A stretch of DNA of 64,000 bases from sequence record LR745208.1; one strand, 5' to 3'. The notes under the pieces are model-generated. The model did no database searches. It was not told where the DNA came from and saw only the letters and a program-made list of their open reading frames with translations. Shown here piece by piece: positions 27,411 to 52,324 of the stretch. Both the position numbers and the translations under genes were made by a program. Position 1 is the first letter of the stretch. Each line of letters opens with the position of its first letter.

Positions 27411-28454
27411 TTAATATTCCTGGCTGGCTTGCACTAAGAGTCCATGTGCCACTGCATTGAGGGGGTCACTGGCTGCTCGAATCTCACTGATCTGAATGGG
27501 GAACTTCTTCCTCTTCCGGTCAAACACTGACTTGAACAGTTCCAGGAACCCCCCTGCCTTGGATGTGCCACCCGACACGACCATTGGGATGGGATTCGGA
27601 AGCGCAAACCTGCCTTGAATGGTCTGAAACTGAAGAGCAATCTGATCAATGGTGTACTCAATCAGGTTCCGAAAATAGAAGACCAAGGCTTCCTGCTCAC
27701 GGCCCACAGGAGCATTCAGGTCAATGCCCTTTTCCTTGATGGCACACATCCTGGCTTGAGTGCCACCAATGGACTTTGCCGCCCCTGCGTCGATAAAGTC
27801 CCCTCCCCGGGCAACCGAAAAAGACAGCCCCTCAATCGTGTTGATTGCGAGAGCACAATTTGTCATACCGGATCCATAACTTAGGGCAACTGCTGAGAAA
27901 TTCTCCTTAGCTGTCTCCGCAAAAACCAGAGACATGGCCTCATTCGCCGCCGTAGGGGTGTAGCCACATTCCCGAACGATCTTCTCCAGGACACCACGGT
28001 GATAGATCACATCCTGTCCGGGACGGTCCACAGGGGCGGCAGGAACCGAGAAGTAGCAATGCTCGTTTGGTACCTTAGGCTCCCCCAAGACATTCTTGAT
28101 CAGGAGCCCTAGCACTTCCATGGCATCAATGTCTGACGAGGACATCAACCCAGCGGCAAGGGGCCTACGAGCCTCCTTGCCGAAAATGTTGGCTGTGTCC
28201 AGGGCGGCATCCCCCAAAATCAGAAGCTCATCATCTCGCTCCACATAGCTCACGTTAGCGAGCTTCAGCATCTTCTTGGATTCCAGAGGAAGCTCCAGGA
28301 AGGCATCCCGAATACGGCGGGTCTCAATGCCCTTGTCCGTACGACGGGCAGCCACAATATTCATGGTCCCCACGTCTAAACCCGCGGATAAATTGGTCTT
28401 TTCACCCAGGTCCCCTGCAATGCTCTCCAGGATGTCATTCTTTGGTCGTGCCAT
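27411..28454 (-). CDS. Actin-fold ATPase (MreB/MamK/ParM-like)
   Basis: Phosphate-1 GLDVGTMN, RRPLAAG, connect-1 EAMSLV, phosphate-2 LSYGSGMT, adenosine VVSGGTS, connect-2 PLNAVAHG. Confidence 0.8.
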   Translation of the reverse strand: MARPKNDILESIAGDLGEKTNLSAGLDVGTMNIVAARRTDKGIETRRIRDAFLELPLESKKMLKLANVSYVERDDELLILGDAALDTANIFGKEARRPLAAGLMSSSDIDAMEVLGLLIKNVLGEPKVPNEHCYFSVPAAPVDRPGQDVIYHRGVLEKIVRECGYTPTAANEAMSLVFAETAKENFSAVALSYGSGMTNCALAINTIEGLSFSVARGGDFIDAGAAKSIGGTQARMCAIKEKGIDLNAPVGREQEALVFYFRNLIEYTIDQIALQFQTIQGRFALPNPIPMVVSGGTSKAGGFLELFKSVFDRKRKKFPIQISEIRAASDPLNAVAHGLLVQASQEY

Positions 28455-31985: not shown

Positions 31986-32494
31986 CCCTCTATATTAATA
32001 GGAGGGTCATTGAATTCCGACATCATGTCCGAAACCACCCGCTCGGAAATGTCCAACCCAGCCTCGTCATCCAATAGGGCGAAGAAGGTCTCAATATCCT
32101 GTGGCTCCAGGAAGTACACATCTTTCAGGAAGTCCTCATAGTCAGCCCTCAGGTCCTCCTCAGGCTCTGACAGCAGGCAATAGACTACCTCCTGGCCCTC
32201 AATACCCGTCAGAACCCCATCCCCCCAGTTGTGGGACCAGAATGGGATCTGAACAGACAAGGACCCCATAATCCTATGGAACCGCTCTGGATGTAGGCGC
32301 CGAAGCTTTTGCTTCCGCTTGAACATCGGATTATTCTTCATCCGGCGATACCGCTTGCGGGACCGTTGAAGGTTCTTAACCCGATTCTTCCTGTAGTTTC
32401 GCTTAGTTTGCGTCCGTGCCATACCTCGCTGTCTGTGCTGGCGTTGAAACGCCTCAACAATACGTGGTATGGAGGGGGAAACCGGGTCGGCCAT
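31976..32494 (-). CDS. Hypothetical protein with basic N-half and acidic C-half (172 aa)
   Basis: ORF in operon; RTQTKRNYRKNRVKNLQRSRKRYRR basic patch. Confidence 0.55.
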   Translation of the reverse strand: MADPVSPSIPRIVEAFQRQHRQRGMARTQTKRNYRKNRVKNLQRSRKRYRRMKNNPMFKRKQKLRRLHPERFHRIMGSLSVQIPFWSHNWGDGVLTGIEGQEVVYCLLSEPEEDLRADYEDFLKDVYFLEPQDIETFFALLDDEAGLDISERVVSDMMSEFNDPPINIEGWD

Positions 32495-32531
32495 ATGAGG
32501 TATGGCTTAAAGGTGGGATACCGAGATTGGG

Positions 32532-35003
32532 CTAGTTTCGAGTGAAATTTTCGCCCTTGACGTAGACGGTAATGACCACCCCATCAGGCAGGACAAAGAA
32601 GGTACCCTCTTCAGTCTCGTCCTTGGAGAGCTTGGCATTCGGGTAGGCGGTGGCGAACTGCTCGGCCGTCATGGACTTGGCATTGAGGGAATCTGGAACC
32701 AGCCCGGTTGCCCCGACGTAGAAGGCCAGTGGCCGAACCCGATCATAGATACCCTCGATGGCCTTGTTGACTTGGATGTTGGCATCTGTAGCTGCTGCCA
32801 CGATGGCATCCTTGTCCCCCCCATGGAGAGTCTTCAGGAAGGTGTCCGGGTCAGTGACACCGGCCACCTTGAGGACAGTCTTGACATCTGCACCACCCCC
32901 CAGCCCGAGGACCCCCTCGTAAATGGGATAGGAGAGAGTATCCACTGCATCCAACACAGTCTTAGATGAAAGCTTCTTGATGTCCCACTTAGCTTTGGGG
33001 GTCAGAAGCTGCCCTACAGTCGCCTTCTCGACTGCTTTTCCGGCAACCCCCAGGGTGAACCGCCTCTGGAGGTACTCATTCCCTGACTTGAGCTTGGACA
33101 CCGATGTCAACTCTGGCACCCCCACATTGATCTTGTAGGACAGCCGTGTATCCACCTTGCCAGTTGCCATGGCATCGGCCAGATCTGAATACTCATTGGT
33201 CGTGGGCGGAGAGAAGTTCAGGGAGGCAGACAGGTGGTGGGCCTTAAGCTCTGCTACCTGTTGGGTCGTCAGGGAGGTGGACTCCCCCTTGACCAGTTCT
33301 GACAGGATCTTGGACAGAACCGTCATCTTTGCCAAATCCTGAAGAGTGCCCTTGTCAATCCCACTGTTGTAGTTCATGTCGTAGTCCACCAGTGGCAGCT
33401 TGGACAGGTCCAAATCGAACTCAGCTCCCGGGGTGTACTCCCCTGACACAAGCCCAATATCCTTGAGGTCCTTGAAGCACCTCTTGTCAGTGGTTCGCAT
33501 CGGAAGGGCTGGCAGGTTGAGCTGCCCATCTCCCACTAGGGTGTAGGAATTGAAGTTGGTCAGGTCCAAGTTCACACCAGAGACGGAGGCAATCCGGTTA
33601 TTGGTCCCCGTACTGTAGAGATCAATTGGCTGGGCCAAGAGCATATTGGCCGTGGCTGTATTCCTATTGAGCTCAAACTTACCCACCGAAGCCCACCCAT
33701 CTGGGTCCCGAAGTCGGGACTCCACTGTGGGCACCTGAATGCTCCCGTCCTTCTGGCGTGTGCCTGGAATCTTCTTAATCCCACGACGCTTGTAGCTTGC
33801 TGACATCTTCTTGACGTTGACGGACAGCGAGCTGTGGTGCTTCTGTAGCACCGAGAACACCGTGAGGAGGGAGGGTCCAGTGGAAGTCAAACCATAGGTC
33901 TCCGTGGGTTTGTAGGAGGTCAGGTCGAACAGGTACCCCTCAACCGCTGCAGCAAATGCTGCCACATCCGAGGAAACCAATGCCTTTGCATGGGACGCAA
34001 GGAGTTCCCCACATCGTGTGGCCACCATGGCATACTTGGCGATATTGAGGTTGCCCTCCGAAATCTGAGTGCGGCAGTAGGCAAAAATGGGAGCCACCTC
34101 TACACTGGTATCCCCTGCCACAGGTGCTGGAATGGCCTTATACTCATCCTCTGAGATCTCGAAATACCGGAAGGCCACCTTGTCATCCGTTGCCGCTAGG
34201 CCCTGGACGGTCATGGTATCCTTGGACCCCAGGAGCTTGCGGGCCGACCGAGACACAAACGCCACGTAGTCTGCATCCCCCTTCCCTACCTCCAGGGCCG
34301 GGGACAGAGACCCCGTAAGGAGCTTGGTTGTGTCATAGATGGCTGAGTACACCTGACGAATGTCTCTAGCCTGGATGCACACCCCGGAGAGGGCGTTGCT
34401 GATCGAGCTGAGTAGCCCGAAGTCACAGTAATCCCGATAGGCGATGGTATTGGCAAACAGATTGGCATGGGTCTTTAGCTTAGTCACCACTGCTTGGATT
34501 GCCTTGCTCTCCGAAGTTGGGGAGTAGTCATTGGCAAACCCGTCCGTGTGAAGGGTCACACAGGTCATTTCCTTGTCATCCACAAGGGTCTCAGCCATTG
34601 CCAGCCCCTGTGAGATGCAGGTCATTGCCGTCGCCCGAATGGCTCGAATCTCCGCAAGATACGGAGATGATGTCTTCATCACATCCGCAACGGTGACCTT
34701 GGCGAAATGCAGCTTGACATCCCCTTGTGAGGAGTAGGTGATCAGGGACACCCGCAGAGATGGGTCATTGAACTCCGTCAGCGTGAGGAGCTTCTCTATT
34801 GTTGAGCGAATATCTGGCATATCCGCATGCATCGATCCGCTCCTGTCTACTACCAAGACGTGATGAGAGGGCTTCTTGACAGGTACCGTCGCCTGAGTGG
34901 CCAGATCCTCCCTCTTAACCAGAAAGAACTTGGTGGGCTTACCTGCAAATGTGTGAAGTGCGAACTTAGACGTATTGCTGTTGGATGATCTGCCGTGTGC
35001 CAT
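32532..35003 (-). CDS. vWA domain protein (823 aa)
   Basis: MIDAS motif VVDRSGSM, conserved T (TAMTCISQGL) and TDG (LHTDGFAN); GAGGA SD. Confidence 0.85.
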   Translation of the reverse strand: MAHGRSSNSNTSKFALHTFAGKPTKFFLVKREDLATQATVPVKKPSHHVLVVDRSGSMHADMPDIRSTIEKLLTLTEFNDPSLRVSLITYSSQGDVKLHFAKVTVADVMKTSSPYLAEIRAIRATAMTCISQGLAMAETLVDDKEMTCVTLHTDGFANDYSPTSESKAIQAVVTKLKTHANLFANTIAYRDYCDFGLLSSISNALSGVCIQARDIRQVYSAIYDTTKLLTGSLSPALEVGKGDADYVAFVSRSARKLLGSKDTMTVQGLAATDDKVAFRYFEISEDEYKAIPAPVAGDTSVEVAPIFAYCRTQISEGNLNIAKYAMVATRCGELLASHAKALVSSDVAAFAAAVEGYLFDLTSYKPTETYGLTSTGPSLLTVFSVLQKHHSSLSVNVKKMSASYKRRGIKKIPGTRQKDGSIQVPTVESRLRDPDGWASVGKFELNRNTATANMLLAQPIDLYSTGTNNRIASVSGVNLDLTNFNSYTLVGDGQLNLPALPMRTTDKRCFKDLKDIGLVSGEYTPGAEFDLDLSKLPLVDYDMNYNSGIDKGTLQDLAKMTVLSKILSELVKGESTSLTTQQVAELKAHHLSASLNFSPPTTNEYSDLADAMATGKVDTRLSYKINVGVPELTSVSKLKSGNEYLQRRFTLGVAGKAVEKATVGQLLTPKAKWDIKKLSSKTVLDAVDTLSYPIYEGVLGLGGGADVKTVLKVAGVTDPDTFLKTLHGGDKDAIVAAATDANIQVNKAIEGIYDRVRPLAFYVGATGLVPDSLNAKSMTAEQFATAYPNAKLSKDETEEGTFFVLPDGVVITVYVKGENFTRN

Positions 35004-35807: not shown

Positions 35808-36608
35808 TCACCGAGCCATGAAGGGCTTCCCCATGAGGGCCAAGGAGCCTTCCAATTGAGGCATCTGCTCGTAATGGGCTGCCCTGAGGGCCACATTCAG
35901 GTTTGTCACCACCTGTGTCATCGGGGCTCCAGGACTCCGTACCAGTTCCTTCAACAGGTAGTACGTACAGGCCCCGTTGTATCGGCCATTGATGAAGGCA
36001 TCAGCCGATGTCTGGTTGCTCTTGCACCCACTGATCAGAGCCACGTTGAGGGGCACTCCCGGCATCCCAAGACCCATTCCCTGTGGGGTGATACCCGCCT
36101 CCTTGGCCGTCTGGACCCCCCAGCTAATGTCCTCAGGCATTGGCATCGAACGGGGAACGGAGTTGCTGAAGGAGCGATCCAGCGTTCCACTGTGACAACT
36201 ATCGGAAACCCATACAAAATTCACCCCGACTGGCACTTTGGAGAACATCTGATTGAACTCCTTATCCCGAATCATCGTGTCATCAGACCAGTTGAAGTTT
36301 TGAGGGCAAATTGCCTCATCCAAATTGTCCACTTCTCCCGCGGGGTTACGAGTGGGGACCTGCACCCCATGCCCTGAAAAATGGAAGAACAACCTATCCC
36401 CTGGCTTGGCTCCGTCCACCAACCAGTGCAACCTGTCGACAATTGCCTGCTTGGTCGCCCGACCATCCACCAAGAGCCGAATGTTGGCCCTCGGCATGGT
36501 ACAATGGTCCATCAGATAGTGGGCCATGTCTGTGATATCGTTGACACACCCATTAAGAGGGCAGCCTGGGTACTTGTTGATCCCAACCATCAAAGATTTA
36601 TCAGTCAT
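35808..36608 (-). CDS. Metacaspase / peptidase C14 (caspase-like)
   Basis: ALxxGINxY-like KSLMVGINKY, LNGCVND, catalytic His in HFSGHG, catalytic Cys in DSCHSG, SGCKSNQTSAD, QMPQLEG. Start placed at MTDKS. Confidence 0.92.
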   Translation of the reverse strand: MTDKSLMVGINKYPGCPLNGCVNDITDMAHYLMDHCTMPRANIRLLVDGRATKQAIVDRLHWLVDGAKPGDRLFFHFSGHGVQVPTRNPAGEVDNLDEAICPQNFNWSDDTMIRDKEFNQMFSKVPVGVNFVWVSDSCHSGTLDRSFSNSVPRSMPMPEDISWGVQTAKEAGITPQGMGLGMPGVPLNVALISGCKSNQTSADAFINGRYNGACTYYLLKELVRSPGAPMTQVVTNLNVALRAAHYEQMPQLEGSLALMGKPFMAR

Positions 36609-37194: not shown

Positions 37195-38679
37195 CTAGCT
37201 ATCTGAAATGCTGTAGGGGGCTGGCTTGGCCCGGAGAGCCTGTTTGCGGTGGCTTGCCCGCATCTCCGCGTGGTGCTTGGCGTCATCGGTCTCCCCCACA
37301 GCCTCATATGCCTGTTGGGCCATGTGATGGGCATGGGCAGCATCGAAATGCTGCTCCTTGTCAAAATCCTCCTCATCAGAGGCCATGGAGAGTTCGTTGG
37401 CCAAGTTGGCCCACTGGAGAGCTGATTTGCCCTTGAACAACTTGGATGACTGCAAATACTTGGAGGCTATTCTGGCAGCAGATTGGGACATGACTACTCC
37501 TCCTGACTCTCTCGAAGCCATCGTGGTCAATTCCGCTGGGGTGAACACCGCTTGAACAATGTCCGATGCCTTGGCCCATTCGACCCGGGCATCATAGCCC
37601 GCAACAGGTCCCAGCATGGAGGGTTGCTGTCGCCAATTGTCCAAATGTTTCAACTTCCCACCCAGCCTCGAAACCACAGACCCAATGGCTGGGCGAATAT
37701 CCTCCGGCTCCTCCCCACGAGCCAAAGCACTACGGTCCAACAACTCCCCATAGAAGGTTAGGGCACTTGAAAAAACGGCACCCTTAGCGATGAACTCGGG
37801 GAAGATTTCAAGGAGCCCCACACTTGGTGCATTCCTATTGAGGTAAACCTGAATTATGTCCTCCAGCTCCTCGCTGAATGGACTGTACAGTGCCCTATCA
37901 TCCAGGAAGAATTCCTTAGGCATTCGAGTCACAAGTGCGCCCAAAACCAACTCCGGCGTTGGTGCCTTCAGTTTCTTTAGGACAGCCCAGATTCCGGCCC
38001 CAACCCCCTCTGACAACCACTTCTTGTTCTCGGGCCGAGAGAAGTACTTGACCAGCCAATTCTGGACCGTCCCCGTCAATGCAGCTTGATGCCTCGCGGC
38101 TACCCTGGCTGCTTGAGAACCCATTGACACATTCTTTCTATCATCTCCGACCCAGAACCCCACCTCATTGAAGGCCACCGGAACCGCGTCCACCCTCTGT
38201 AGGGGCATATCAGCATCCTTGGGCGTGTAAGACAGGGTCATGTGAGGAGTATACCCATGGTTATCTTTCCAGGTCACCCCAAGGATCTTGAGAGCTTGGC
38301 CCACCCGGTCCCGGAACTCATTGAGCCCTGGCACATCCACACTGAGGAAGACCGGGTCTCCCCCATCCTCAGCCTGCCCAGCAAACCGCCCAATACCTCC
38401 CAGGACCCCCACTAAAGGCTGACTGGAGGCTGCTACCTCTCGGAGGACACCCAAAATAGCGTCGGGTGATACCGCAAGGTCAGCTGCCTTACCAAGGGCG
38501 AACAGGGTAATGTGCAGGTTTTCCACGGGCTCTGCACCCTCCCCCTCCAAGACAACCTGATTGGCTACCTCAACGGGAATGGGCAGACAGATCATCGATC
38601 CAGTATGGGCTGCCTCAAGAGCCCTACGAGCTACTTTGTGCACCAACAGGGTGTGCATTATGGGGTCCCACACGGGCAT
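37195..38679 (-). CDS. Multidomain protein with N-terminal 2H phosphoesterase (2'-5' RNA ligase/Acb1-like) domain
   Basis: Two HxT motifs, NLHITLF (~38501-38520) and TPHMTLSY (~38227-38250), with typical spacing; two further unknown domains. Start ATG 38679 (TTG 38688 or ATG 38658 possible). Confidence 0.85.
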   Translation of the reverse strand: MPVWDPIMHTLLVHKVARRALEAAHTGSMICLPIPVEVANQVVLEGEGAEPVENLHITLFALGKAADLAVSPDAILGVLREVAASSQPLVGVLGGIGRFAGQAEDGGDPVFLSVDVPGLNEFRDRVGQALKILGVTWKDNHGYTPHMTLSYTPKDADMPLQRVDAVPVAFNEVGFWVGDDRKNVSMGSQAARVAARHQAALTGTVQNWLVKYFSRPENKKWLSEGVGAGIWAVLKKLKAPTPELVLGALVTRMPKEFFLDDRALYSPFSEELEDIIQVYLNRNAPSVGLLEIFPEFIAKGAVFSSALTFYGELLDRSALARGEEPEDIRPAIGSVVSRLGGKLKHLDNWRQQPSMLGPVAGYDARVEWAKASDIVQAVFTPAELTTMASRESGGVVMSQSAARIASKYLQSSKLFKGKSALQWANLANELSMASDEEDFDKEQHFDAAHAHHMAQQAYEAVGETDDAKHHAEMRASHRKQALRAKPAPYSISDS

Positions 38680-38706
38680 CTCTCTCAATGGGTCGGGATA
38701 GGCCAG

Positions 38707-39120
38707 TTAACCGCCCGGCTGGAACGTGGTGATCTCCTGCTCAATAATGAGGTCCCTCAAATTTGGGTGTAGATGCCGCATCTTAGCCACCAAGATCCTG
38801 TTGTGTACTAGAATGTCCTTAGGGGCAACAATCGCTGTTCGAATGAGGATGTCATCACTGTCATTGAAGGAGGCGTTTAGCACGTCCCCAATATTGTCCA
38901 CCCAAGAGAGCAGGAGCTTGGATTTCTCAGGGCCAGGGTTTTCAACGTATCGCCAAAGCTGGATTGGGGATGTGGGTCGGAAAGGGGACAACTCCTCAAT
39001 AACCCTCTGTGGAGGAAGCCCCCGGGGTGCATGTAGCATCCACTCCTGAAGCCAGCCCATAGTTTCTTGGGATAGAGGCTTCAAAATCGCCCTTGCTGCC
39101 ACCCGTTCTACCAAGCCCAT
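38707..39120 (-). CDS. Hypothetical protein with N-terminal RVAAR motif (137 aa)
   Basis: MGLVERVAARAIL...; ORF in operon. Confidence 0.55.
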   Translation of the reverse strand: MGLVERVAARAILKPLSQETMGWLQEWMLHAPRGLPPQRVIEELSPFRPTSPIQLWRYVENPGPEKSKLLLSWVDNIGDVLNASFNDSDDILIRTAIVAPKDILVHNRILVAKMRHLHPNLRDLIIEQEITTFQPGG

Positions 39121-39733: not shown

Positions 39734-39764
39734 CTAAAAAGTTGCCTTCTCGTGCCGATAGGGT
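39734..39764 (+). promoter_or_regulatory. sigma28 (FliA/SigD/WhiG)-type promoter, copy 2
   Basis: CTAAAAAGT-tgccttctcg-TGCCGATAGGGT followed by GAGGA SD and ATG 39778; same blocks and spacer length as 3877-3907. Confidence 0.75.
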
Positions 39765-39777
39765 AGTGAGGAAACCG

Positions 39778-40065
39778 ATGAACTACCGTGACCACAACCG
39801 CCTGATCGCCATCCAGGAAGAGATGCTAGACCTCCTGAACGAAGCGAAGAGCCTCATCAAGCACGAGGGGCTAGCCTACGACCGGGCCAAGGCCTACTGG
39901 ATCGGAGCAGTGGAAATGGGACTCACCAACGACCACAGCTACCTCGGAAGTGCTGGAGTTTCCATGCAGGATACCATCGAGGAAACCCACCCCGAAGACG
40001 AGGAGGAAGATGGAGAAGACGAGGATGACGAGGATGACGAGGAAAAAGACGAAGATGACGAGTAA
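39778..40065 (+). CDS. Small protein with acidic C-terminal tail (95 aa)
   Basis: MNYRDHNRL...EDEEEDGEDEDDEDDEEKDEDDE; GAGGA SD. Confidence 0.65.
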   Translation: MNYRDHNRLIAIQEEMLDLLNEAKSLIKHEGLAYDRAKAYWIGAVEMGLTNDHSYLGSAGVSMQDTIEETHPEDEEEDGEDEDDEDDEEKDEDDE

Positions 40066-40070
40066 GGAAG

Positions 40071-40334
40071 ATGAACATGTGCACCAAGCCCACCCCAAAC
40101 AACCTGGACACCCTCTTTGCCAAGATCGCCAAGGAAGAGCTGTATATCGAAACCTTGGAACCCCGCCACATGGACGGCCTGGACTTCCATGAGGTGGGCG
40201 TGTGGGGGCTCAAGCGAGCCTTGAAGCGTGCCTACGAAGCCGGGGCAGCCAGTCAATGGCTCCCGACCACTGGGCCCAAGACCCGCCGTGTAAGAAAACC
40301 AAGATCCGCCCCGTCAAAAACAGAAAAACCATGA
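40071..40334 (+). CDS. DUF6900-like small protein
   Basis: IAKEELYIETLEPRHMDGLDFHEVGVWGLKRALKRAYEAG matches the IAxxxLxIETLExRxxDxLDFHDVxVWxxxxALxxAYxAG pattern. Confidence 0.7.
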   Translation: MNMCTKPTPNNLDTLFAKIAKEELYIETLEPRHMDGLDFHEVGVWGLKRALKRAYEAGAASQWLPTTGPKTRRVRKPRSAPSKTEKP

Positions 40335-40954
40335 ACCCCACCCCACACATCGAAAACCGGGAAACCTTCTTCGCCCGCCTTCGCCCCATCCTGGCCCCCT
40401 CGGAGTTGCTCAACGTCGAAGTCGCCTACGCGCTCGCCAAACATGCACACCGGGCACAAACCCGGAAGGAACTCGACGATGAGGGCCGCCCCCTCCGCTA
40501 CTTCGAGCACCTGCGTGGAACAGCCCTGATTGCCATCGAGGAGCTGGACCTTGTGGAGCCAGAGATCATCATCTCCGCCCTGATGCACGATGCGCTGGAG
40601 GATACCCGAGACATCTCGGCCCCCATGCTTGAGCACCTGTTTGGGGCCGAAGTCGCTAAGATCGTGCTGCTCCTCACCAAGGACCCCAAGGAGGGCTACT
40701 ACGAGCGACTCCTCCATTGGGGCACCGAGAAGGTCTGGCTGGTCAAGGGCTGCGACCGGCTACAGAACCTCCGCCACCTGAAGGACACCACCCCTGCCTT
40801 CCAAGCCAAGCAACTGGCCGAAACCCGGAAGGTCATCTACCCCATGACCCTCAAAATGGTCTTGCAGGCACGTGGCTCCAAGTATGAGTCCGCTGCCACT
40901 GCCCTCCAGGACAAAATCTACCAAACTGTCGAGTCTTTCGAGGTAGCAACGTGA
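40331..40954 (+). CDS. HD-domain small alarmone hydrolase-like protein (SpoT/Mesh1-like)
   Basis: AYALAKHAHRAQTRK, YFEHL, ALMHDALEDT, VLLLTK, VKGCDRLQNLR. Start placed at ATG 40331 (ATGA overlap). Confidence 0.85.
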   Translation: MNPTPHIENRETFFARLRPILAPSELLNVEVAYALAKHAHRAQTRKELDDEGRPLRYFEHLRGTALIAIEELDLVEPEIIISALMHDALEDTRDISAPMLEHLFGAEVAKIVLLLTKDPKEGYYERLLHWGTEKVWLVKGCDRLQNLRHLKDTTPAFQAKQLAETRKVIYPMTLKMVLQARGSKYESAATALQDKIYQTVESFEVAT

Positions 40955-41243: not shown

Positions 41244-41495
41244 ATGCTCCCCACCCATGTCATCTGCGAAACCTACCCAGCCTACGTCAACCACATCCGC
41301 CCCGTCACCAAGGCCACCAAACTCAAGCCAGGAGGGGGACTCAAAGACATCCAAGCCCTCTGTGGCTACACCTTCAAAGAAGGCTGGGACAAGCCCGAGG
41401 TGGTCCTCACCCACCGCTACAGCGAGGCCATGGTGACCGGCAATGGCTCCAATTACTGCGCGGAATGCGTGAAGCTCTACCGGGAAGCCCCGTAG
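41244..41495 (+). CDS. Hypothetical protein (83 aa)
   Basis: AGAGG SD; ALCG...YCAECV putative Zn ligands. Confidence 0.55.
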   Translation: MLPTHVICETYPAYVNHIRPVTKATKLKPGGGLKDIQALCGYTFKEGWDKPEVVLTHRYSEAMVTGNGSNYCAECVKLYREAP

Positions 41496-41532
41496 AGTCC
41501 CATGCCCCTGCCCTGATAGTCCCCCTATCAGG
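41475..41532. terminator. Two tandem hairpins separating the sigma28-driven genes from the leader-peptide genes
   Basis: CTCTAC-c-GGG-aag-CCC-c-GTAGAG (41475-41497) and CCTGATAG-tcccc-CTATCAGG (41512-41532); the second contains the CCCCTATC motif. Confidence 0.45.
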
Positions 41533-41542
41533 ACCCCCAAAC

Positions 41543-41824
41543 ATGACCCTGCGTTCCAAACTCATCCGTCTCGCCCATGACAATCCCGAGCTTAGGCCCC
41601 AGCTGCTCCCACTCTTGAAGGAGGCTGCCCAAGCCTTCAACAAGCCCAATGTCACCAAGTGGATGAGGAATCATGCCAGCGAATTTGATACCGCCACCGA
41701 ACTGGCCGAAGACGCTGCCGATGAGTTCGGAGCCAAAGACAAGGGAGGCCCCCTGGACGATGACACCCACTGGATCTGGGACCTTGCCCAGGACGCCATG
41801 AGTTGGTCCAAAGACCACGCCTAA
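41543..41824 (+). CDS. Small protein with conserved N-terminal leader (93 aa)
   Basis: MTLRSKLIRLAHDNPELRPQLLPLLKEAA leader shared with the next gene. Confidence 0.7.
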   Translation: MTLRSKLIRLAHDNPELRPQLLPLLKEAAQAFNKPNVTKWMRNHASEFDTATELAEDAADEFGAKDKGGPLDDDTHWIWDLAQDAMSWSKDHA

Positions 41825-41837
41825 CAGGAACCCACCA

Positions 41838-42536
41838 ATGACCACCCTTCGATCCAAACTCATCCGTCTCGCCCATTCGGACCCGGCTCTCCGGCCCCAT
41901 CTCCTTCCCCTGTTGGCAGACCGCACAGCAGCCCTCCCCTCTGGCACCGTCCAGATGTTCCTGGAGGTCCTGAAATCGAAACTGACCCAGCATGACAAGC
42001 GGGTGAGCGAGGCGGAAGCCAAGAAGGGCCGGTCGAATATCTACCGCCTTGGGTTGCTCCTGGAAGCGGCCCACAAGGTAGATGGCGACGTACATAGTGT
42101 CATGGACCAGGACACCCCAGAGGCCCTGGAGGTGCTCAAGAAGTCCTTGGATCGCCGCTTTGAGGCGACCTTCCCACCCGTGAAGGCCACCCTTAAGCAA
42201 ATCGACGAGTTCCTCAAGTCGGGCAAGAAACCCTCCCTCATCAAGAGCGCCGCCGCCCGTTGGACCCCCAAGGCGAAGGTTTGGTACCAGCTCCCCGACA
42301 GGGATGGGAGTGACTTTTACTTCTACGCCACTGAGATCCAGAAGAATGGTGGTGCCAAAGGGGTCATGGTCGAATGGCGTCTAGGCAGCCGAGGAAAACG
42401 CCCACAGCCCCGGGCCAAAAGCTACAGCACAGGTCAGCTCTTTGAGGGTGATAACAGAGTCTACAAGGAAATCCCAGTGAGTGATGTTCCCGAGGAAGTG
42501 GTTTCGGAAGCTAAATCCTCAGGGAAGATGGGCTAG
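41838..42536 (+). CDS. Two-domain protein with conserved N-terminal leader (232 aa)
   Basis: MTTLRSKLIRLAHSDPALRPHLLPLLADRTAA leader; internal KSAA junction. Confidence 0.7.
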   Translation: MTTLRSKLIRLAHSDPALRPHLLPLLADRTAALPSGTVQMFLEVLKSKLTQHDKRVSEAEAKKGRSNIYRLGLLLEAAHKVDGDVHSVMDQDTPEALEVLKKSLDRRFEATFPPVKATLKQIDEFLKSGKKPSLIKSAAARWTPKAKVWYQLPDRDGSDFYFYATEIQKNGGAKGVMVEWRLGSRGKRPQPRAKSYSTGQLFEGDNRVYKEIPVSDVPEEVVSEAKSSGKMG

Positions 42537-43141: not shown

Positions 43142-44575
43142 CTATACTGACTGCATCACGTCTATCAGAAACCGTCGAATCCTCTCGGCTACCTCTTGGG
43201 GGCGCTTATTCACATCTCGCTCCCAAAGGATCAAGCACCGCATTCCACAATCCTTGTAGAAGGCGACCACATCATCATGGTGTGCCTCTCGGGACTTCCC
43301 AGTCTTCTCAGGGCCGTGCCACCAGTCACCAAACGCCTCAATGACCGCTGGGATGCGAAACAACTTGATGTCTGCCCCATTACGATGAGCTTCCATCTGC
43401 CCCCCCGTCAGGACGATGAAGTCCGGGTACCTGTCCTTAGGAGTCCCCGGACGCCTAACAGGATACACCCGGCTAGGACGTGATCGGTCCCCTGTGAAGA
43501 GAACCCCAGGAGGAGACAACTCCTGTACCCGTTGTTCCAACCCATTTGGAGACTCATGCTTCTGATTGCGCCACAGGAACTGAGGGGGATAGGGCACCCC
43601 ATACTTGCCATTCCATACCTCCTTGATCTTGAACCACACAGCTTCTACCTTCGAGGGGTTATCAGTCCCGTACTTCTCCAACCACGTCTCTCGGGCTTTG
43701 GCCAAGACATCAGGGCACTTCTGGGAATGCTGGCCATTGTGGTTGGCTAGGTTGGTCTCGTAGGCTCGCTTCTGTACTTCTGGCAAAAGCAATGGGGTAC
43801 GGACCCCAAAAACCTTCAAATTGCTGGTCTCCCAGACCAATTTGCCTCCAGGAGACATCATGGGGTGCCGGACACCCCAGTTCTTCATTGAGGTATCCTT
43901 GAACTGCACCTTGAAGGTGTCCGTTAGAAGATAGTGACCGACCCCATACTTCTCTTGATTGGTCTGTATCCTCTTCGCCATTACCTCTGGGGCCTGATTG
44001 GGATTCTCAACCCCAAACCGTTCGAGATTGGAGACACGGATCCGCCTCTGAATCTCCTCAGACCCAAATGGGTTCTCGGCCCCATACCTCTCCAAATTGG
44101 TAGCAGATGCCCTGGCCTTGATCTCTGGAGACTGAAGGCCCCAACCACCATATTTGATAAGCATTGTCTCCTTGGACTGAGCCTTCACATCCCCCGCCTG
44201 GAACACATTGTCCACTCCATACCTGTCCTGAACAGTGGCCACCCTCCGCTGAAGTGTCGCCCCAATTCTCACAGAGGCTTCAGGGAACTTGGCCCGGTAG
44301 GTTTCTTCGGTCATACCATGGACCTTCTTCAGGTGGTCCATCATCCGCTTGAACCGCATATCCCTACCCGTAAGGAAACACTCCTGGCATCGAACCCAAT
44401 CTGTTCCTTCCACCAACCCGTCAGCGTATGGGCCCCGCTTGAAGTAGGCCTCCCAATTGAACTCTGCGTAAGGAATACCGATCTCTGTGTTCCAGGAAAG
44501 GCAGGCTAAAGCATGGCTAGGGAGTCCCTTGTGGGACATTGACTTCTTACAGGCAGGGCAGAGGACATCACTCAT
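43142..44575 (-). CDS. Free-standing homing-endonuclease-like protein: Zn fingers, ~10 T(N)xE(R/K)YGxxNP repeats, C-terminal Vsr/PD-(D/E)xK nuclease
   Basis: CPAC and CQEC..HLKKVH Zn fingers; ~23-aa repeats (TNLERYGAENPFG, SNLERFGVENPNQ, TWLEKYGTDNPSK...); YPDFIVL...VIEAFGDWWHG...CLILWERD. Confidence 0.8.
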   Translation of the reverse strand: MSDVLCPACKKSMSHKGLPSHALACLSWNTEIGIPYAEFNWEAYFKRGPYADGLVEGTDWVRCQECFLTGRDMRFKRMMDHLKKVHGMTEETYRAKFPEASVRIGATLQRRVATVQDRYGVDNVFQAGDVKAQSKETMLIKYGGWGLQSPEIKARASATNLERYGAENPFGSEEIQRRIRVSNLERFGVENPNQAPEVMAKRIQTNQEKYGVGHYLLTDTFKVQFKDTSMKNWGVRHPMMSPGGKLVWETSNLKVFGVRTPLLLPEVQKRAYETNLANHNGQHSQKCPDVLAKARETWLEKYGTDNPSKVEAVWFKIKEVWNGKYGVPYPPQFLWRNQKHESPNGLEQRVQELSPPGVLFTGDRSRPSRVYPVRRPGTPKDRYPDFIVLTGGQMEAHRNGADIKLFRIPAVIEAFGDWWHGPEKTGKSREAHHDDVVAFYKDCGMRCLILWERDVNKRPQEVAERIRRFLIDVMQSV

Positions 44576-44703: not shown

Positions 44704-45597
44704 TTAAAGGAAATTCCGAGGTGAAAGCACACCCCTACCCACCGAACTTCCAAATGCCGATTTTATCCCTATCCCATACTTAGGCTGTGAAATTCCTCTC
44801 AAGAACTTAACTGTCCTAGCCTTAGCCTCCGCCGCCTTATCAAACTGGGATTCCGCGTTCTGCTTGAGGGACTCATACTTGGAGGATCGCTCAATGGACA
44901 ACGAAATGCCGCCAATTGAGTAGTCGAACTCTTCATGGACCATCATAGCCGCAAGGGCAAAGCAGGCGTGGGAGATGGCCTCCCAGAGGATGGCGGTCCG
45001 CCACGCTGGCTTTTCCATGACGAGCTTATCAATGGTGTCGAGCCCCTCAGTCATGGGAGGCATCATATTAAACCAGTCCAATCCCCGCTCAAGGTAACAA
45101 AATAGCTCATCCTCTCGCCATATCTGGCCAAAGACCCGATTGTAAGCCCCAATGTTCCCCTCAGCCTCTGGAGGAGCGAAGTGATAATCGCGATCAGGGC
45201 AGTTGTGACCCGTTATTGAGGACTTGGACAGCACAAGGTTGTGGTTGCCCTCAACCGTGATGTCATACATGACATCCCTAGGTGGGAGTGGATGGAGCCC
45301 CCTGACTCGACTGTAGGCAATCTGACCTCCAACAACGGCCAATACATAAGCACCTGCTTGAAGGTCCTTCGCCTCAACAGCCTCTGTTGGTGAGGTATAG
45401 ATCCGATGTCCGCCAGTAACCACAGATGCCCCATAATCCGTTACCAATTCCCAAACCGTCTCAGCCCCAATCTGTGCTTGGTGCACTCTTTCAACCTGAC
45501 GCCACTCTACTTCCCCACCAGGAGAGACAGAACGGACTCGGAGGGTTCCGGCTCGATAGGAGGCTTGGAGTTTTTCTTTTTGCGTCTCAGTAAGCAT
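44704..45597 (-). CDS. C-terminal half of fractured head-tail adaptor-like gene: C-intein (132 aa) + C-extein (165 aa)
   Basis: GAGGAG SD + ATG; intein blocks B (VVTGGHRIY), F (MYDITVEGNHNLVL) and G (GHN/C); C-extein CPDRDYHFAPP...FDYSIGGISLSIERSSKYESL. Confidence 0.85.
   Translation of the reverse strand: MLTETQKEKLQASYRAGTLRVRSVSPGGEVEWRQVERVHQAQIGAETVWELVTDYGASVVTGGHRIYTSPTEAVEAKDLQAGAYVLAVVGGQIAYSRVRGLHPLPPRDVMYDITVEGNHNLVLSKSSITGHNCPDRDYHFAPPEAEGNIGAYNRVFGQIWREDELFCYLERGLDWFNMMPPMTEGLDTIDKLVMEKPAWRTAILWEAISHACFALAAMMVHEEFDYSIGGISLSIERSSKYESLKQNAESQFDKAAEAKARTVKFLRGISQPKYGIGIKSAFGSSVGRGVLSPRNFL
45202..45597 (-). other. C-intein (long half) of an atypically split intein
   Basis: 132 aa ending His-Asn (45207-45202), followed by Cys+1 (45201-45199). 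Confidence 0.85.
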
Positions 45598-50071: not shown

Positions 50072-52324
50072 TTAGCCCTCTGCTGTTACAGAAAGCAGCC
50101 AACAAGCGAGCTGATTCGTTGCGCCGTTGCAACCAATGTCTAAGGTTGTACCTGCTGGTACCACGGGCTGTGCTGCTCCTGCCACTGCGGGAGTGACAGT
50201 GGCCCCACCGTTTACGCTATATGTGACTACAGCTACCTTGTTGCCTGTGTCCACCATAAGGTCCACCGTATCATATTGAGCCCACACGATAGCTGCCGTG
50301 GTGTTGCTGGTTCCACCAACCACAACGGTCATCACACCTGTGGTGGCAATCTCACAGTAGTTGGTACCGTTTATGTACCAGATCGTTTGAGCTGAGTCAG
50401 CATTGGCAAGAGTAGACTTGGGCCGGAATACAATACGTACCTTGAGCTTACCCGTGATGCTGGCAGCGGCATTGGGGTGGTACAGACGCTCCGGCTGGCG
50501 AGTAGCTGAGGCTCCTGCTGTTATGACGTGCTCGCTTCTGTACGCCCCAACTTCGTATTGAGCGCCCCACGCCCCTACGTTACTAATAGACTCTAGGGTG
50601 CCTTCTGTAGGGCTTATGACGTAGTAGGTTGCAGCAGTATGGGTGGCAGTCTGCTCGACTACCTTCCACAATGTGGATGTCGTGAAATTTGTGGTTGTGG
50701 GCGGATTCACGGTCTGGATGAATCCTACACCACTGTAGGCCCACTTGTACCACACGGATTGAGTGTATATTCCGGCCGCCCCCAGAGGATTCTGAGACAG
50801 GTACTGCCAAACAGTAGGACTCAGTGCGATCATCTCCTTAGCTGTCCCGCCATCTGGTGCCTGAGTGTTCCTGAATGTGAGACCGAACGAATTTAGCCAG
50901 GAAGCATTAGAAATATCTGTGCTACGTAGAACGACGTTGATTCTGGTAGGTTCCAGGACCAGACCTATTACATCGGCATCCAACCGCTTACCGAATCGCG
51001 GTATATTAGTGGTGATACCTGTGGTGACCACGGTGCTGGTGCCAGTCTGCACAGTCTCACTGGCAGCCGTACCAGCAGCCCGTAGGAACACCGCATCGTT
51101 GGGTAGCACCCCACCCCTGAAGTCCCAGTTGATGAGCGAACCAGTTTGTGTAGACGGGGTTAGGTCCCGTGGCCTACCAGTGTTGAGAACTGTTGCCAGT
51201 GTTGGTGCAGTGTGAACGACATTGGACTGGCTTATCTGGACCCTAGCGAATGTCATGGTCCCTGTACCGTCACCCTGATATGTGTAGGTCCCAGTTCCTG
51301 CCCCATAGATTTGGAGAATCCACGAGGTTCCTGAAGCAACATTTGAGGGCCATGTTGCTTCACAACGATAGAACCCATTCGGAGCTGGTATAATGCGCCC
51401 AGTACGGCCGCTCACTGCCGGAGTATGCGTCACTACTAGGGTTTGCAGGTTAAACTCAGTCGCCGTACCCGTGGAGGCGTCCCAGAGCGAAAACATGTAC
51501 TTAGTTCCGGGTTTGGCATAAATGAGGATAGAAAATGGCTTAGCAACGAGTAGACCCGCAGAAGTCTGTCTGTAGTAATGTGACGTAGGAGCCCCATCCA
51601 CAGTATCAGTGAACAAGCAGGCTGTAGTTCCACCAAATGGGTCTATTTGTCCACCAGTTGTGGAGCCCACATTGGTCTTCACCCAGTTTGCATTTGTCTG
51701 GTCATCACTGTAAGTGAAAAAGTTCTGTGCCTCAGCGTCAATATTTCTGATGTTCCCATCATCCACCGGTTGGACGGTAGTGGGGCAGTAGGGACCTTCC
51801 CAGTTAGCTTGCACAAGCTGGAAACCAAACAAGTACAAGCCCTTCGTTGCGTCACCGACGTGGATTGCACCACCATTCCCAGAAGCTGTGAATATCTCAG
51901 AGTAGAAGGCGGTAGAATATGGTGTTGTCCGTGTAATTGAACAGCGATACCACCCAGGATACCCAACAACCGGAGTGATTTTCGGTGTTTGGGAGGCGTG
52001 AGTGGTACCAACAACACCGTTGGCCAAATCGAAGTAACTAAGGTCCTCAGTTCCTACGACATTGATAGCTAATGCCAACCACGTCCACTCACCAGCCTTG
52101 GCATAGACAGACAAAGTGTATTGTCCAGGTGGCAGTGTAAGTGGTGCACCAGGGTAGCAACCATGGTAGTTGTTTGCGACACCTGTGTCCGCGAGACGAT
52201 CAGCGGTCAGTGCACTGTCGATGGGATTTGTGACAGCATTAGCAGAAATGGCGCTCAGGAATTTCGTATATAATGCGTTGTCGAACTCCTCAGAGTACTT
52301 GAGTTTGTTCTGCTTAGTAGCCAT
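50072..52324 (-). CDS. Head/tail fibre-like protein (750 aa): two spike-fibre-type domains + module A + module C
   Basis: N.L.YSEEFDNA and NFFTYSDDQTNANW...DPFGGTTA spike-fibre-type repeats; RAAGTAASETVQTG and ERLYHP modules shared with the neighbours. Confidence 0.7.
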   Translation of the reverse strand: MATKQNKLKYSEEFDNALYTKFLSAISANAVTNPIDSALTADRLADTGVANNYHGCYPGAPLTLPPGQYTLSVYAKAGEWTWLALAINVVGTEDLSYFDLANGVVGTTHASQTPKITPVVGYPGWYRCSITRTTPYSTAFYSEIFTASGNGGAIHVGDATKGLYLFGFQLVQANWEGPYCPTTVQPVDDGNIRNIDAEAQNFFTYSDDQTNANWVKTNVGSTTGGQIDPFGGTTACLFTDTVDGAPTSHYYRQTSAGLLVAKPFSILIYAKPGTKYMFSLWDASTGTATEFNLQTLVVTHTPAVSGRTGRIIPAPNGFYRCEATWPSNVASGTSWILQIYGAGTGTYTYQGDGTGTMTFARVQISQSNVVHTAPTLATVLNTGRPRDLTPSTQTGSLINWDFRGGVLPNDAVFLRAAGTAASETVQTGTSTVVTTGITTNIPRFGKRLDADVIGLVLEPTRINVVLRSTDISNASWLNSFGLTFRNTQAPDGGTAKEMIALSPTVWQYLSQNPLGAAGIYTQSVWYKWAYSGVGFIQTVNPPTTTNFTTSTLWKVVEQTATHTAATYYVISPTEGTLESISNVGAWGAQYEVGAYRSEHVITAGASATRQPERLYHPNAAASITGKLKVRIVFRPKSTLANADSAQTIWYINGTNYCEIATTGVMTVVVGGTSNTTAAIVWAQYDTVDLMVDTGNKVAVVTYSVNGGATVTPAVAGAAQPVVPAGTTLDIGCNGATNQLACWLLSVTAEG

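What the first reader, a model, noticed from the sequence alone, without database searches (positions are those of the whole stretch)
37195..39120. 2H phosphoesterase (Acb1-like) embedded in a polyprotein-like chain punctuated by R(V/I)A(A/S)(R/K) motifs
Seen: the ~494-aa protein has KVARRALEAA before the 2H domain, RVAARHQAA (~38081-38110) before domain 2 and RIASKYLQSS (~37455-37480) before domain 3. The neighbouring gene starts LVERVAARA. Both HxT catalytic motifs are intact. Established: T4 Acb1 is a 2H phosphodiesterase that degrades CBASS cyclic-nucleotide signals; other 2H enzymes process RNA ends. Inference: the motif may mark protease-separated modules of a packaged cargo, delivering an anti-defence phosphodiesterase together with two unknown effectors.
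Basis: partly seen in the sequence, partly recalled or inferred. Interest (0 to 1): 0.65.

Follow-up and report, generated by a model that had tools for sequence, protein, structure and literature searches.

The report
Leader-tagged phage 2H phosphoesterase fusion
A 485-kb groundwater phage encodes a LigT-like 2H phosphoesterase joined to two orphan helical modules. The repeated short motif marks the starts of modules, one of which is a separate gene in a relative, not shown protease sites, and the enzyme belongs to a known capsid-gene-associated group of phage 2H domains rather than to Acb1.

Summary
The window is part of LR745208.1, an uncultured 485-kb phage. The minus-strand ORF 37195-38688 has a real 2H phosphoesterase domain with both HxT motifs intact. 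It passes Pfam PF13563 but fails the Acb1 model, and its fold is closest to bacterial LigT/CPDase. Its nearest viral relatives are 2H domains fused to or next to portal, MuF or prohead-protease genes. This is the "polyvalent protein" 2H group described in 2017. One relative is fused to the anti-Thoeris domain Tad3.

The motif is real and not chance, but it sits 5-7 residues after a Met in all four copies. In the one distinct relative, module 3 is a separate 97-aa gene that starts with the motif. The window keeps AGGAGG-N7-ATG in front of that module. The chain is therefore best read as a gene fusion of leader-bearing modules, not a demonstrated polyprotein.

Modules 2 and 3 have no relatives among 1.84 billion representative proteins. 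Packaging, cleavage (a metacaspase lies two genes away) and substrate remain untested. The finding is a new member of a known kind and of moderate interest.

The parts
37195..38688 (-). Fused ORF of 497 aa from TTG (likely start ATG at 38679 or 38658): leader 1 + 2H domain + module 2 + module 3
   Evidence: ORF list. A 99%-identical copy in another assembly (P0001/L084) is also fused. The junction is identical in contigs of four sequencing runs.
38605..38658 (-). Leader 1: MHTLLVHKVARRALEAAH, an N-terminal helix ahead of the 2H core
   Evidence: Conserved in L004 with R22 changed to M. Absent from other 2H relatives. Predicted helical at low confidence. The invariant T-G just before M32 shows translation must start upstream of M32.
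38125..38604 (-). 2H phosphoesterase core (res 29-188) with HxT motifs at 38506-38514 and 38236-38244
   Evidence: PF13563 E 4.7e-13. phrog_14859 E 2.3e-18. AlphaFold2 mean pLDDT 87.8. Foldseek best matches are 5h7e and E. coli LigT. The two His and two Thr are invariant in 18 sequences.
38077..38124 (-). Leader 2: MGSQAARVAARHQAAL, a helix at the 2H / module 2 junction
   Evidence: Conserved in L004, where a 37-residue zinc-ribbon insert follows it directly. Predicted helix 182-201 in the 2H model. No clear Shine-Dalgarno sequence upstream.
37492..38076 (-). Module 2 (res 205-399): all-helical, lineage-specific, no known family
   Evidence: Only P0002 matches among 1.84e9 representative proteins. 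No Pfam, PHROG or NCBIfam hit. No usable Atlas hit.
37499..37504 (-). AGGAGG Shine-Dalgarno sequence, 7 nt upstream of the in-frame ATG at 37489-37491
   Evidence: Genome-wide, 11 of 15 AGGAGG-N5-9-ATG sites followed by an ORF of >=60 aa are ORF starts. The variant L084 keeps GGAGG-N7-ATG.
37195..37491 (-). Module 3 (res 400-497), beginning with leader 3 MSQSAARIASKYLQSS (37444-37491). It is a separate 97-aa gene in the relative.
   Evidence: L004:1998-2291 encodes a free-standing 97-aa protein 80% identical to it, starting MNVVAKVASRYL. The same protein, P0006, was recovered in the exhaustive search.
38707..39120 (-). Upstream 137-aa gene, whose product starts with leader 4 MGLVERVAARAILK (39073-39120)
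   Evidence: Its ATG lies 6 nt after the stop of the preceding ORF. No family hit. The homologue in L004 is truncated at the contig end.
35808..36605 (-). Metacaspase-type C14 peptidase, two genes downstream. It is a candidate processing enzyme, by inference only.
   Evidence: PF00656 E 1.8e-25. Matches metacaspase structures 7qp0 (E 4.6e-30) and 4f6o, with the SGHG and DSCHSG dyad motifs intact. It is the only C14 gene in the genome. Synteny is kept in L004 and L084.
32532..35003 (-). 823-aa protein with an N-terminal VWA domain, in the same conserved gene string
   Evidence: PF13519/PF00092. phrog_2426 E 2.5e-23. Synteny in L004 and L084.

Best explanation
The 497-aa ORF is a fusion of originally separate small genes in a huge groundwater phage.

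Shown:
- Its first module is a catalytically intact, LigT/CPDase-like 2H phosphoesterase.
- This 2H belongs to the clade of phage 2H domains that are fused to or encoded beside portal, MuF and prohead-protease genes (the 'polyvalent protein' 2H of Iyer et al. 2017). It is not Acb1.
- Modules 2 and 3 are helical and specific to this lineage.
- Each of the three modules, and the product of the upstream 137-aa gene, begins with the same short basic helix, M-x(4-6)-[RK]-[VI]-A-x-[RK]. The motif is therefore an N-terminal leader and not an internal linker.
- Module 3 is a free-standing gene in a relative, and the window keeps its own ribosome-binding site and ATG. It can probably be made both as the tail of the fusion and as a separate 98-aa protein.

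Inferred:
- The shared leader is a recruitment or targeting peptide that brings the enzyme and its partner modules to one place. The most likely place is the assembling capsid, for delivery with the DNA, as the capsid-targeting sequence does for the diverse T4 internal proteins.
- The two histidines of the HxT motifs would hydrolyse 2',3'-cyclic-phosphate RNA ends or 2'-5'/3'-5' linked nucleotide signals early in infection.
For: - 2H domain: PF13563 E 4.7e-13 and phrog_14859. His and Thr of both motifs are invariant in 18 relatives. AlphaFold2 model pLDDT 87.8.
- Fold comparison: best PDB matches are D. radiodurans CPDase 5h7e (1.5e-8) and E. coli LigT, with Acb1 7t27 at rank 45. Best viral matches are actinophage 'RNA ligase', 'capsid morphogenesis' and 'structural' proteins at TMq up to 0.75, with Acb1 at rank 29.
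- Clade context, among the 15 closest IMG/VR proteins: 3 are fused to Phage_portal, 4 to XkdF-type protease, 1 to an HK97-type protease and 1 to Tad3+DUF7701. Others lie directly beside a Mu-type portal, MuF or capsid gene. Cultured actinophages show the same pattern.
- Literature: 2H domains in phage polyvalent proteins fused to MuF or portal, never linked to RNA ligases (PMC5512222).
- Consistent with that, the genome's RtcB and four ligase-family genes lie more than 100 kb away.
- Fusion: L004 has module 3 as a separate 97-aa gene, 80% identical, that starts with the motif.
- Internal start: AGGAGG-N7-ATG precedes module 3, a signal that marks ORF starts in 11 of 15 comparable sites. The fused form is identical in four runs and in a 99% variant.
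- Leader: the Met-anchored motif occurs 5 times against 0.25 expected, 4 of them here. Codons differ between copies, so the similarity is at protein level. The modules are otherwise unrelated.
- A second, clearer N-terminal leader family (LIRLAH) on at least 9 unrelated proteins shows this phage does use shared leaders.
- T4 precedent for diverse internal proteins sharing only a targeting leader: PMC3012670.
Against: - There is no direct evidence of packaging, of processing or of any enzymatic activity.
- In this genome the gene is not beside an identifiable portal, MuF, capsid or prohead-protease gene. Pfam models for these found nothing. The nearest recognisable virion genes are about 10 kb away.
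- Outside the locus the motif is not significantly tied to N-termini, so it is a local feature, not a genome-wide signal.
- Only one distinct relative exists (L004, plus a 99% variant), so conservation of the leader cannot be judged. Its first copy already varies (R to M).
- Public gene calls start both genes downstream of the leader (P0001 at M32; a 117-aa call in L084).
- Module 2's Met has no clear ribosome-binding site.
- The helices are predicted at low confidence.
Confidence: 0.5

Rival explanations
1. The ORF is a true polyprotein that a protease cuts at or after each R(V/I)A(A/S)(R/K) motif to release a phosphodiesterase and two effectors. The protease would be the prohead protease or the neighbouring metacaspase.
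For: - The motif sits at every module boundary.
- A metacaspase with an intact His/Cys dyad, from a family known to cut after Arg/Lys, lies two genes downstream and stays syntenic in all three contigs.
- Relatives of the 2H domain are embedded in large portal or protease fusions that are likely to need processing.
- Polyvalent proteins are proposed to be cut into units (PMC5512222).
Against: - Each copy follows a Met by 5-7 residues.
- One boundary is an ordinary gene boundary in L004, with the motif at the free N-terminus.
- The window keeps a Shine-Dalgarno sequence plus ATG there, so separate products need no protease.
- The motif is not a known site of any phage prohead protease (own knowledge: T4 L/I-x-E, phiKZ S/A/G-x-E).
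- Basic residues are too common to link the motif to the metacaspase.
- There is no embedded peptidase.
Confidence: 0.15
2. An ordinary cytoplasmic RNA-end-healing or cyclic-phosphodiesterase enzyme of the LigT type with lineage-specific accessory domains. The Ala/Arg-rich helices would be only linkers, or relics of gene starts, with no shared function.
For: - The closest solved folds are LigT and CPDase.
- The genome carries RtcB and four ligase-family genes, so RNA repair is part of its repertoire.
- No head genes were identified next to the locus.
- The leader is not enriched elsewhere in the genome.
Against: - The gene is more than 100 kb from every ligase gene.
- It fails the ThpR/LigT equivalog model (23.8 bits against 65.7).
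- Its sequence and structure neighbours are the head-module and polyvalent 2H clade, which Iyer et al. found never linked to RNA ligases.
- Four Met-anchored copies in a row are far beyond chance.
Confidence: 0.22
3. A genuine Acb1-family anti-CBASS nuclease that cleaves 3'3'-cGAMP and cA3.
For: It has the 2H fold with both HxT motifs. There is a weak partial hit to PF23474 (E 0.0031). 2H enzymes of viruses repeatedly degrade immune nucleotides (PMC9117128 listed; PMC5512222).
Against: - PF23474 scores 17.7 bits against a cut-off of 27 and covers only profile positions 85-129.
- Acb1 structures rank 45th in PDB (TMq 0.38) and 29th in BFVD (TMq 0.43), behind LigT and the actinophage 2H proteins.
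- tblastn against 50,697 phage records listed no T4-like phage among the 32 records with a hit at E<=1e-5.
Confidence: 0.06
4. The motif is a chance product of an Ala/Arg-rich composition.
For: The core is only five residues and of low complexity. It was defined after seeing it. Ala/Arg-rich helices also follow the 2H domain in GC-rich relatives.
Against: - The 5-mer occurs 8 times against about 1.4 expected, more than in any of 300 shuffles.
- The Met-anchored form occurs 5 times against 0.25 expected, with 4 in adjacent modules.
- Leader 2 is unchanged in L004, and leader 3 keeps the [RK]-[VI]-A-S-[RK]-Y-L core there.
Confidence: 0.04

Closest known systems
2H phosphoesterase domains of phage 'polyvalent proteins' (Iyer, Burroughs, Anand, de Souza, Aravind 2017, PMC5512222) and the actinophage 'RNA ligase'/2H-XkdF proteins encoded after portal and MuF
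   Same: - The same 2H clade by sequence (29-43% identity) and by structure (TMq up to 0.75).
- A multi-module chain.
- No linkage to RNA ligase genes.
- One relative carries a validated anti-defence domain, Tad3.
   Different: - Not fused to or adjacent to a recognisable MuF, portal or protease gene.
- No embedded peptidase.
- The partner modules are orphans.
- The host genome is a 485-kb phage rather than a 60-90-kb actinophage.
- Modules carry a shared Met-anchored leader, and one of them toggles between fused and separate.
T4 internal proteins (IPI, IPII, IPIII) with the capsid targeting sequence (PMC3012670)
   Same: Gene products that are neighbouring, or fused here, and otherwise unrelated share only a short N-terminal leader. 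The proposed role is counter-defence cargo delivered with the DNA.
   Different: The leader sequence is unrelated (basic Ala/Arg helix against the T4 CTS). No L/I-x-E protease site is present. No T4-type prohead protease was found. Packaging is untested.
Bacterial/archaeal LigT (ThpR) and CPDase, e.g. E. coli LigT 5ldm and D. radiodurans CPDase 5h7e
   Same: The best solved structural matches (E 1.5e-8 to 1e-6, TM 0.55-0.66). Both HxT motifs are present.
   Different: Only 16-18% identity. It fails the TIGR02258 equivalog cut-off. It carries extra N-terminal and C-terminal helices and two added modules.
Acb1 (phage T4 gp57B / FBB1 Acb1, anti-CBASS nuclease; PMC9117128)
   Same: The 2H superfamily fold and catalytic HxT pair. 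A possible role in degrading immune nucleotides.
   Different: Below the family threshold and only a distant structural neighbour. Acb1 proteins in the matched entries are single-domain, about 140-150 aa.
In-frame nested or fused phage genes (lambda C/Nu3, own knowledge)
   Same: An internal ribosome-binding site and ATG inside a longer ORF would give a co-C-terminal short product.
   Different: Here the arrangement looks like a recent fusion of two genes. They are separate in L004, with an extra gene between them. It does not look like a conserved nested pair, and expression is untested.

Membership tests
2H phosphoesterase superfamily | Two H-x-T/S motifs | tested here: met
   H59-I-T61 and H149-M-T151. 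Invariant in 18 aligned relatives.
2H phosphoesterase superfamily | Family model above its curated threshold, and the 2H fold | tested here: met
   PF13563 49.9 bits against 27. AlphaFold2 pLDDT 87.8. 47 PDB matches at E<=1e-3; those listed are 2H-fold proteins (LigT, CPDase, Usb1, AKAP18, VP3, ns2, Acb1).
Acb1 (PF23474) | Score above the Pfam gathering threshold over the whole domain | tested here: not met
   17.7 bits against 27. Only profile positions 85-129 of 144 are matched.
Acb1 (PF23474) | Closest structural neighbours are Acb1 proteins | tested here: not met
   7t27 is at rank 45 (TMq 0.38). BFVD Acb1 entries are at ranks 29 and 40 (TMq 0.43).
Acb1 (PF23474) | Cleaves 3'3'-cGAMP and cA3, and rescues phage from CBASS | not testable with these tools
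   Needs enzymology and infection assays.
LigT/ThpR RNA 2',3'-cyclic phosphodiesterase (TIGR02258 equivalog) | Score above the equivalog cut-off | tested here: not met
   23.8 bits against 65.7. The fold-level similarity is nevertheless the best among solved structures.
Phage polyvalent-protein 2H clade (PMC5512222) | 2H domain of the clade whose members are fused to MuF, portal or head proteins | tested here: met
   The closest relatives are portal-2H, 2H-XkdF and S78-2H fusions, or neighbours of portal, MuF or capsid genes.
Phage polyvalent-protein 2H clade (PMC5512222) | This protein is itself fused or adjacent to a virion domain or an embedded peptidase | tested here: not met
   No such domain in the ORF. 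No MuF, portal, S77, S78, S78_2 or HK97 capsid hit anywhere in the genome with Pfam models. Divergent huge-phage versions may escape these models.
Phage polyvalent-protein 2H clade (PMC5512222) | No association with RNA ligase genes | tested here: met
   RtcB and the four PF09414 hits lie more than 100 kb away.
CTS-type leader-tagged capsid cargo (T4 internal proteins) | A short N-terminal leader shared by otherwise unrelated, clustered gene products | tested here: met
   Four Met-anchored copies in two adjacent ORFs. The modules are unrelated. Module 3 is free-standing in L004.
CTS-type leader-tagged capsid cargo (T4 internal proteins) | Presence in virions and removal of the leader by the prohead protease | not testable with these tools
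   The phage is uncultured. No RNA or proteome data were available.
Viral polyprotein | Modules are released only by proteolysis at defined junction sites | tested here: inconclusive
   The module 2/3 junction is a gene boundary in L004 and has its own Shine-Dalgarno sequence plus ATG in the window. The 2H/module 2 junction has neither. Cleavage was not tested.

The most novel reading that the evidence does not exclude
The basic Met-anchored helix would be a new kind of N-terminal address tag in a huge phage. It would load a 2H phosphodiesterase and three orphan modules into the capsid or onto a common hub. It would then be removed or activated by the phage's own Arg/Lys-specific metacaspase, which is encoded with a VWA partner in the same conserved gene string. 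Together with the separate LIRLAH leader found on at least 9 unrelated proteins, this would mean the phage sorts its proteins with at least two dedicated leader codes.
Probability: 0.12. Interest if true: 0.75.

Novelty: new member of a known kind. Interest (0 to 1): 0.4.

Why it matters
- It places a huge-phage gene in the clade of capsid-gene-associated 2H phosphoesterases. These have long been predicted, but not shown, to be injected counter-defence enzymes. One relative is physically fused to the validated Thoeris inhibitor Tad3.
- That makes the clade a sensible target for assays against nucleotide-signalling defences: CBASS, type III CRISPR, Thoeris and Pycsar.
- The split/fused state of module 3 is a 'Rosetta stone' hint that the orphan modules work with the enzyme.
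- The shared leaders (this one and LIRLAH) suggest that protein sorting signals in huge phages can be read from sequence.
- Nothing here is yet surprising to a specialist. The value lies in correcting the Acb1 label and the cleavage-site reading.

Tried and rejected
- AlphaFold2 on the whole protein with 4 sequences gave pLDDT 40, which is unusable.
- Word-based searches with the whole protein, the C-terminal 308 aa and the 2H domain alone found only P0001 and P0002, or nothing.
- The exhaustive phmmer search of residues 189-497 found only P0002 and P0006.
- The ESM Atlas gave no usable hit for module 2 and noise-level hits (<0.8) for module 3.
- A PDB sequence search with the 2H domain found nothing relevant.
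- IMG/VR and JGI metagenome scans with the protein found only the genome itself.
- Paralogy between modules: none by BLASTP.
- A DNA-level repeat behind the motif: rejected, because the codons differ.
- A genome-wide N-terminal signal: a short HMM and regexes found a few more N-terminal-looking copies (for example genome 27116-28441 and 100737-101117). Enrichment outside the locus is not significant, and those proteins have no annotation.
- Locating the head module with Pfam models for portal, MuF, capsid and proteases: nothing found.
- No RNA runs hold the locus.
Full report
**Source and anatomy.**
The window is identical to bases 310001-374000 of LR745208.1, an unannotated 'uncultured phage' record of 485 kb. 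CheckV-type completeness is 92%. The DNA occurs in several groundwater metagenome runs.

The finding covers two adjacent minus-strand ORFs:
- 38707-39120 (137 aa).

The two ORFs sit in a long minus-strand gene block. Downstream lie a 177-aa ORF, a C14 peptidase, a 148-aa ORF and an 823-aa VWA protein. Recognisable virion genes are 10 kb or more away. These are phrog_1645 'virion structural protein', a tail protein, and a 1685-aa protein with an endolysin-like domain.

**The enzyme.**
Residues about 29-188 form a 2H phosphoesterase domain.
- PF13563 gives E 4.7e-13 (49.9 bits, cut-off 27). PF02834 is also above its cut-off. phrog_14859 gives E 2.3e-18.
- H59-I-T61 and H149-M-T151 are intact and invariant in an 18-sequence alignment of relatives.
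- The Acb1 model PF23474 scores 17.7 bits against 27 and covers only part of the profile.
- The ThpR/LigT equivalog TIGR02258 scores 23.8 bits against 65.7.
- With the 18-sequence alignment, AlphaFold2 gives a confident model: mean pLDDT 87.8, pTM 0.83.
- Against PDB, Foldseek ranks D. radiodurans CPDase (5h7e, 1.5e-8), E. coli LigT and archaeal LigT-like proteins first. Usb1, AKAP18, and the rotavirus and coronavirus phosphodiesterases follow. Acb1 (7t27) is at rank 45, with TMq 0.38.
- Against predicted viral structures, the best matches (TMq 0.64-0.75) are actinophage proteins named 'RNA ligase', 'capsid morphogenesis protein' or 'putative structural protein', many of them 900-1100 aa long. 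Acb1 entries appear at ranks 29 and 40.

So the domain is a real, probably active 2H enzyme with a LigT-like fold. It is not a member of the Acb1 family.

**The company the 2H clade keeps.**
tblastn against 50,697 phage records found only actinophage relatives, at about 30-36% identity over the 2H domain. In three annotated examples the gene lies directly after portal, MuF or 'maturation protease' genes. In two of them the 2H domain is fused to an XkdF-type (Peptidase_S78_2) protease domain.

A profile-guided scan of IMG/VR gave 15 distinct proteins with the closest 2H domains. Their architectures and neighbours are as follows:

| Arrangement | Loci |
|---|---|
| C-terminal fusion to Phage_portal | 3 proteins |
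| Fusion to Peptidase_S78_2 | 4 proteins |
| Fusion to Peptidase_S78 | 1 protein |
| Weak match to Mu-like_Pro | 1 protein |
| Directly downstream of a Mu-type portal | L077, L080 |
| Downstream of MuF | L079 |
| Directly upstream of a capsid gene | L063 |
| 2H + Tad3 + DUF7701, 502 aa | L081 |

L081 has the same three-module layout as the window protein. Tad3 is a ThsB-binding inhibitor of type I Thoeris (PMC13728456).

This is the group Iyer et al. described in 2017. They reported 2H domains in phage 'polyvalent proteins' fused to MuF or portal and never linked to RNA ligases. They predicted these act as RNases or as degraders of defence nucleotides after delivery (PMC5512222). In agreement, this genome has one 2H gene, and its RtcB and four ligase-family genes lie more than 100 kb away.

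**The motif.**
The three peptides and the neighbour's N-terminus are present as described.
- R[VI]A[AS][RK] occurs 8 times in about 150,000 residues. About 1.3-1.5 are expected, and the maximum in 300 shuffles was 5.
- All four local copies lie 5-7 residues after a Met: MHTLLVHKVARR, MGSQAARVAAR, MSQSAARIASK and MGLVERVAAR.
- The Met-anchored pattern M-x(4-6)-[RK][VI]A[ASR][RK] occurs 5 times in the proteome against 0.25 expected, with a maximum of 3 in 500 shuffles. Four of the five are in these two ORFs.
- The chance that 4 of their 17 Mets carry the pattern is about 7e-14. The pattern was defined after the fact, so the exact figure overstates the case, but chance is not a tenable explanation.
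- The codons differ between copies, so this is protein-level similarity and not a DNA repeat.
- The modules show no other similarity to each other.
- Outside the locus the motif is not significantly tied to N-termini, so it is a local feature.

**The relative that decides the reading.**
The protein has one distinct relative in 5.8 billion clustered proteins, P0002 on the 6.4-kb groundwater contig L004. There is also a 99% variant, P0001, on L084.
- In L004 the 2H-module 2 gene ends after module 2.
- A 128-aa gene of the LIRLAH family follows.
- Then comes a separate 97-aa gene that begins MNVVAKVASRYL and is 80% identical to module 3 of the window protein.
- The exhaustive HMMER search of residues 189-497 against 1.84 billion representatives returned only P0002 (module 2) and this 97-aa protein, P0006.
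- In the window, the ATG that aligns with that gene's start is preceded by AGGAGG at a 7-nt spacing.
- In this genome, 11 of the 15 AGGAGG-N5-9-ATG sites followed by an ORF of 60 aa or more are ORF starts. AGGAG is enriched upstream of ORF starts, at 9.3% against 1.9% background.
- The 99% variant keeps GGAGG-N7-ATG.
- The fused junction is identical in contigs of four runs, so it is not an assembly slip.
- In L004 a 37-residue zinc ribbon is inserted directly after the second motif helix. That helix is therefore not an integral part of module 2's fold.

Hence the module 2/3 junction is a former gene boundary, and possibly a start site still in use. The motif is the N-terminal leader of each module.

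**What the leader does (inference).**
A cluster of otherwise unrelated products that share only a short N-terminal leader recalls the T4 internal proteins. These are diverse counter-defence proteins that share only the capsid targeting sequence (PMC3012670).

The same phage has a second and much clearer leader. M-x(1-3)-LRSKLIRLAHxNPxLRPxLLPLL heads at least 9 ORFs whose remaining sequences are unrelated. Two of them are in the window, and one lies between the modules in L004. So shared leaders are a habit of this genome.

I therefore favour a recruitment or targeting role. Capsid loading is the most likely destination, given where the 2H clade is found. This step is not shown. No portal, MuF, capsid or prohead-protease gene could be identified in this genome with Pfam models. 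There are no expression or proteome data.

**The protease question.**
The neighbouring C14 peptidase is a metacaspase. It matches 7qp0 (E 4.6e-30), 4f6o and MCA2, and its SGHG and DSCHSG dyad motifs are intact. It is the only C14 gene in the genome and is syntenic with the 2H gene in all three contigs.

Metacaspases cut after Arg or Lys (established knowledge of the family), and the leaders are bracketed by basic residues. Nothing here tests it, and basic residues are too common for the link to carry weight.

**Modules 2 and 3.**
Both are predicted helical, at low confidence. Neither has a family, Atlas or structural lead. Their function is open. The split/fused alternation suggests they act together with the enzyme.

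**Verdict.**
- The 'Acb1-like' label is wrong at family level.
- The 'polyprotein punctuated by cleavage motifs' is better explained as a fusion of leader-bearing modules.
- The 'delivered anti-defence cargo' idea is consistent with the published polyvalent-protein concept, and with the fusions of this 2H clade to portal, protease and Tad3 domains, but it is unproven for this gene.
- It is a new member of a known kind. Interest is 0.4.

Noticed in passing
window 41465-41824 (+) and 41838-42536 (+); also L004:1615-2001 and at least 7 further ORFs of the 485-kb genome: A conserved N-terminal leader of about 25 residues, M-x(1-3)-LRSKLIRLAHxNPxLRPxLLPLL, heads at least 9 ORFs whose remaining sequences show no similarity to each other. 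One copy is internal, at residue 351 of a 594-aa ORF. There is no Pfam family. In L004 a member sits exactly between the 2H-module 2 gene and the module 3 gene.
   Followed up: partly
window 27411-28454 (-): A 347-aa protein matches Pfam Volactin (PF25216) over the full length at E 1.6e-68. This is an actin-family cytoskeletal protein encoded by a huge phage.
   Followed up: no
window 35808-36605 (-) and 32532-35003 (-): A metacaspase with an intact His/Cys dyad, the only C14 gene in the genome, and an 823-aa VWA-domain protein (phrog_2426) stay in the same order with the 2H gene in L004 and L084. NCBIfam gives a weak hit to 'caspase, EACC1-associated type'.
   Followed up: partly
window 40334-40954 (+): An HD_4 domain protein (PF13328, E 4.3e-11; phrog_990 'metal-dependent phosphohydrolase') lies on the opposite strand. 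HD_4 is the RelA/SpoT-type hydrolase HD domain (own knowledge). A second nucleotide-phosphohydrolase candidate therefore lies about 1.6 kb from the 2H gene.
   Followed up: no
L081:2923-4431: An IMG/VR phage protein of 502 aa combines a 2H domain of the same clade with Tad3 (PF25185, E 2e-31, anti-Thoeris) and DUF7701.
   Followed up: partly
window 4901-9958 (-): A 1685-aa ORF has an endolysin-like domain at residues about 1013-1157 (phrog_3513). This is typical of a virion-associated lysin or ejection protein.
   Followed up: no
window 17682-18863 (-), 43142-44575 (-), 44704-45597 (-): Two ORFs resemble homing endonucleases (phrog_314, phrog_3339). A third has a weak intein-splicing hit below threshold.
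   Followed up: no
window 39742-40065 (+): A small ORF ends in a run of about 30 Asp/Glu residues. Its function is unknown.
   Followed up: no
genome C1:230865-231950 and C1:248035-248490, 51312-51899, 138914-139399, 32277-32741 (outside the window): The phage encodes an RtcB RNA ligase (E 1e-112) and four PF09414 ligase-family hits. All lie far from the single 2H gene.
   Followed up: partly
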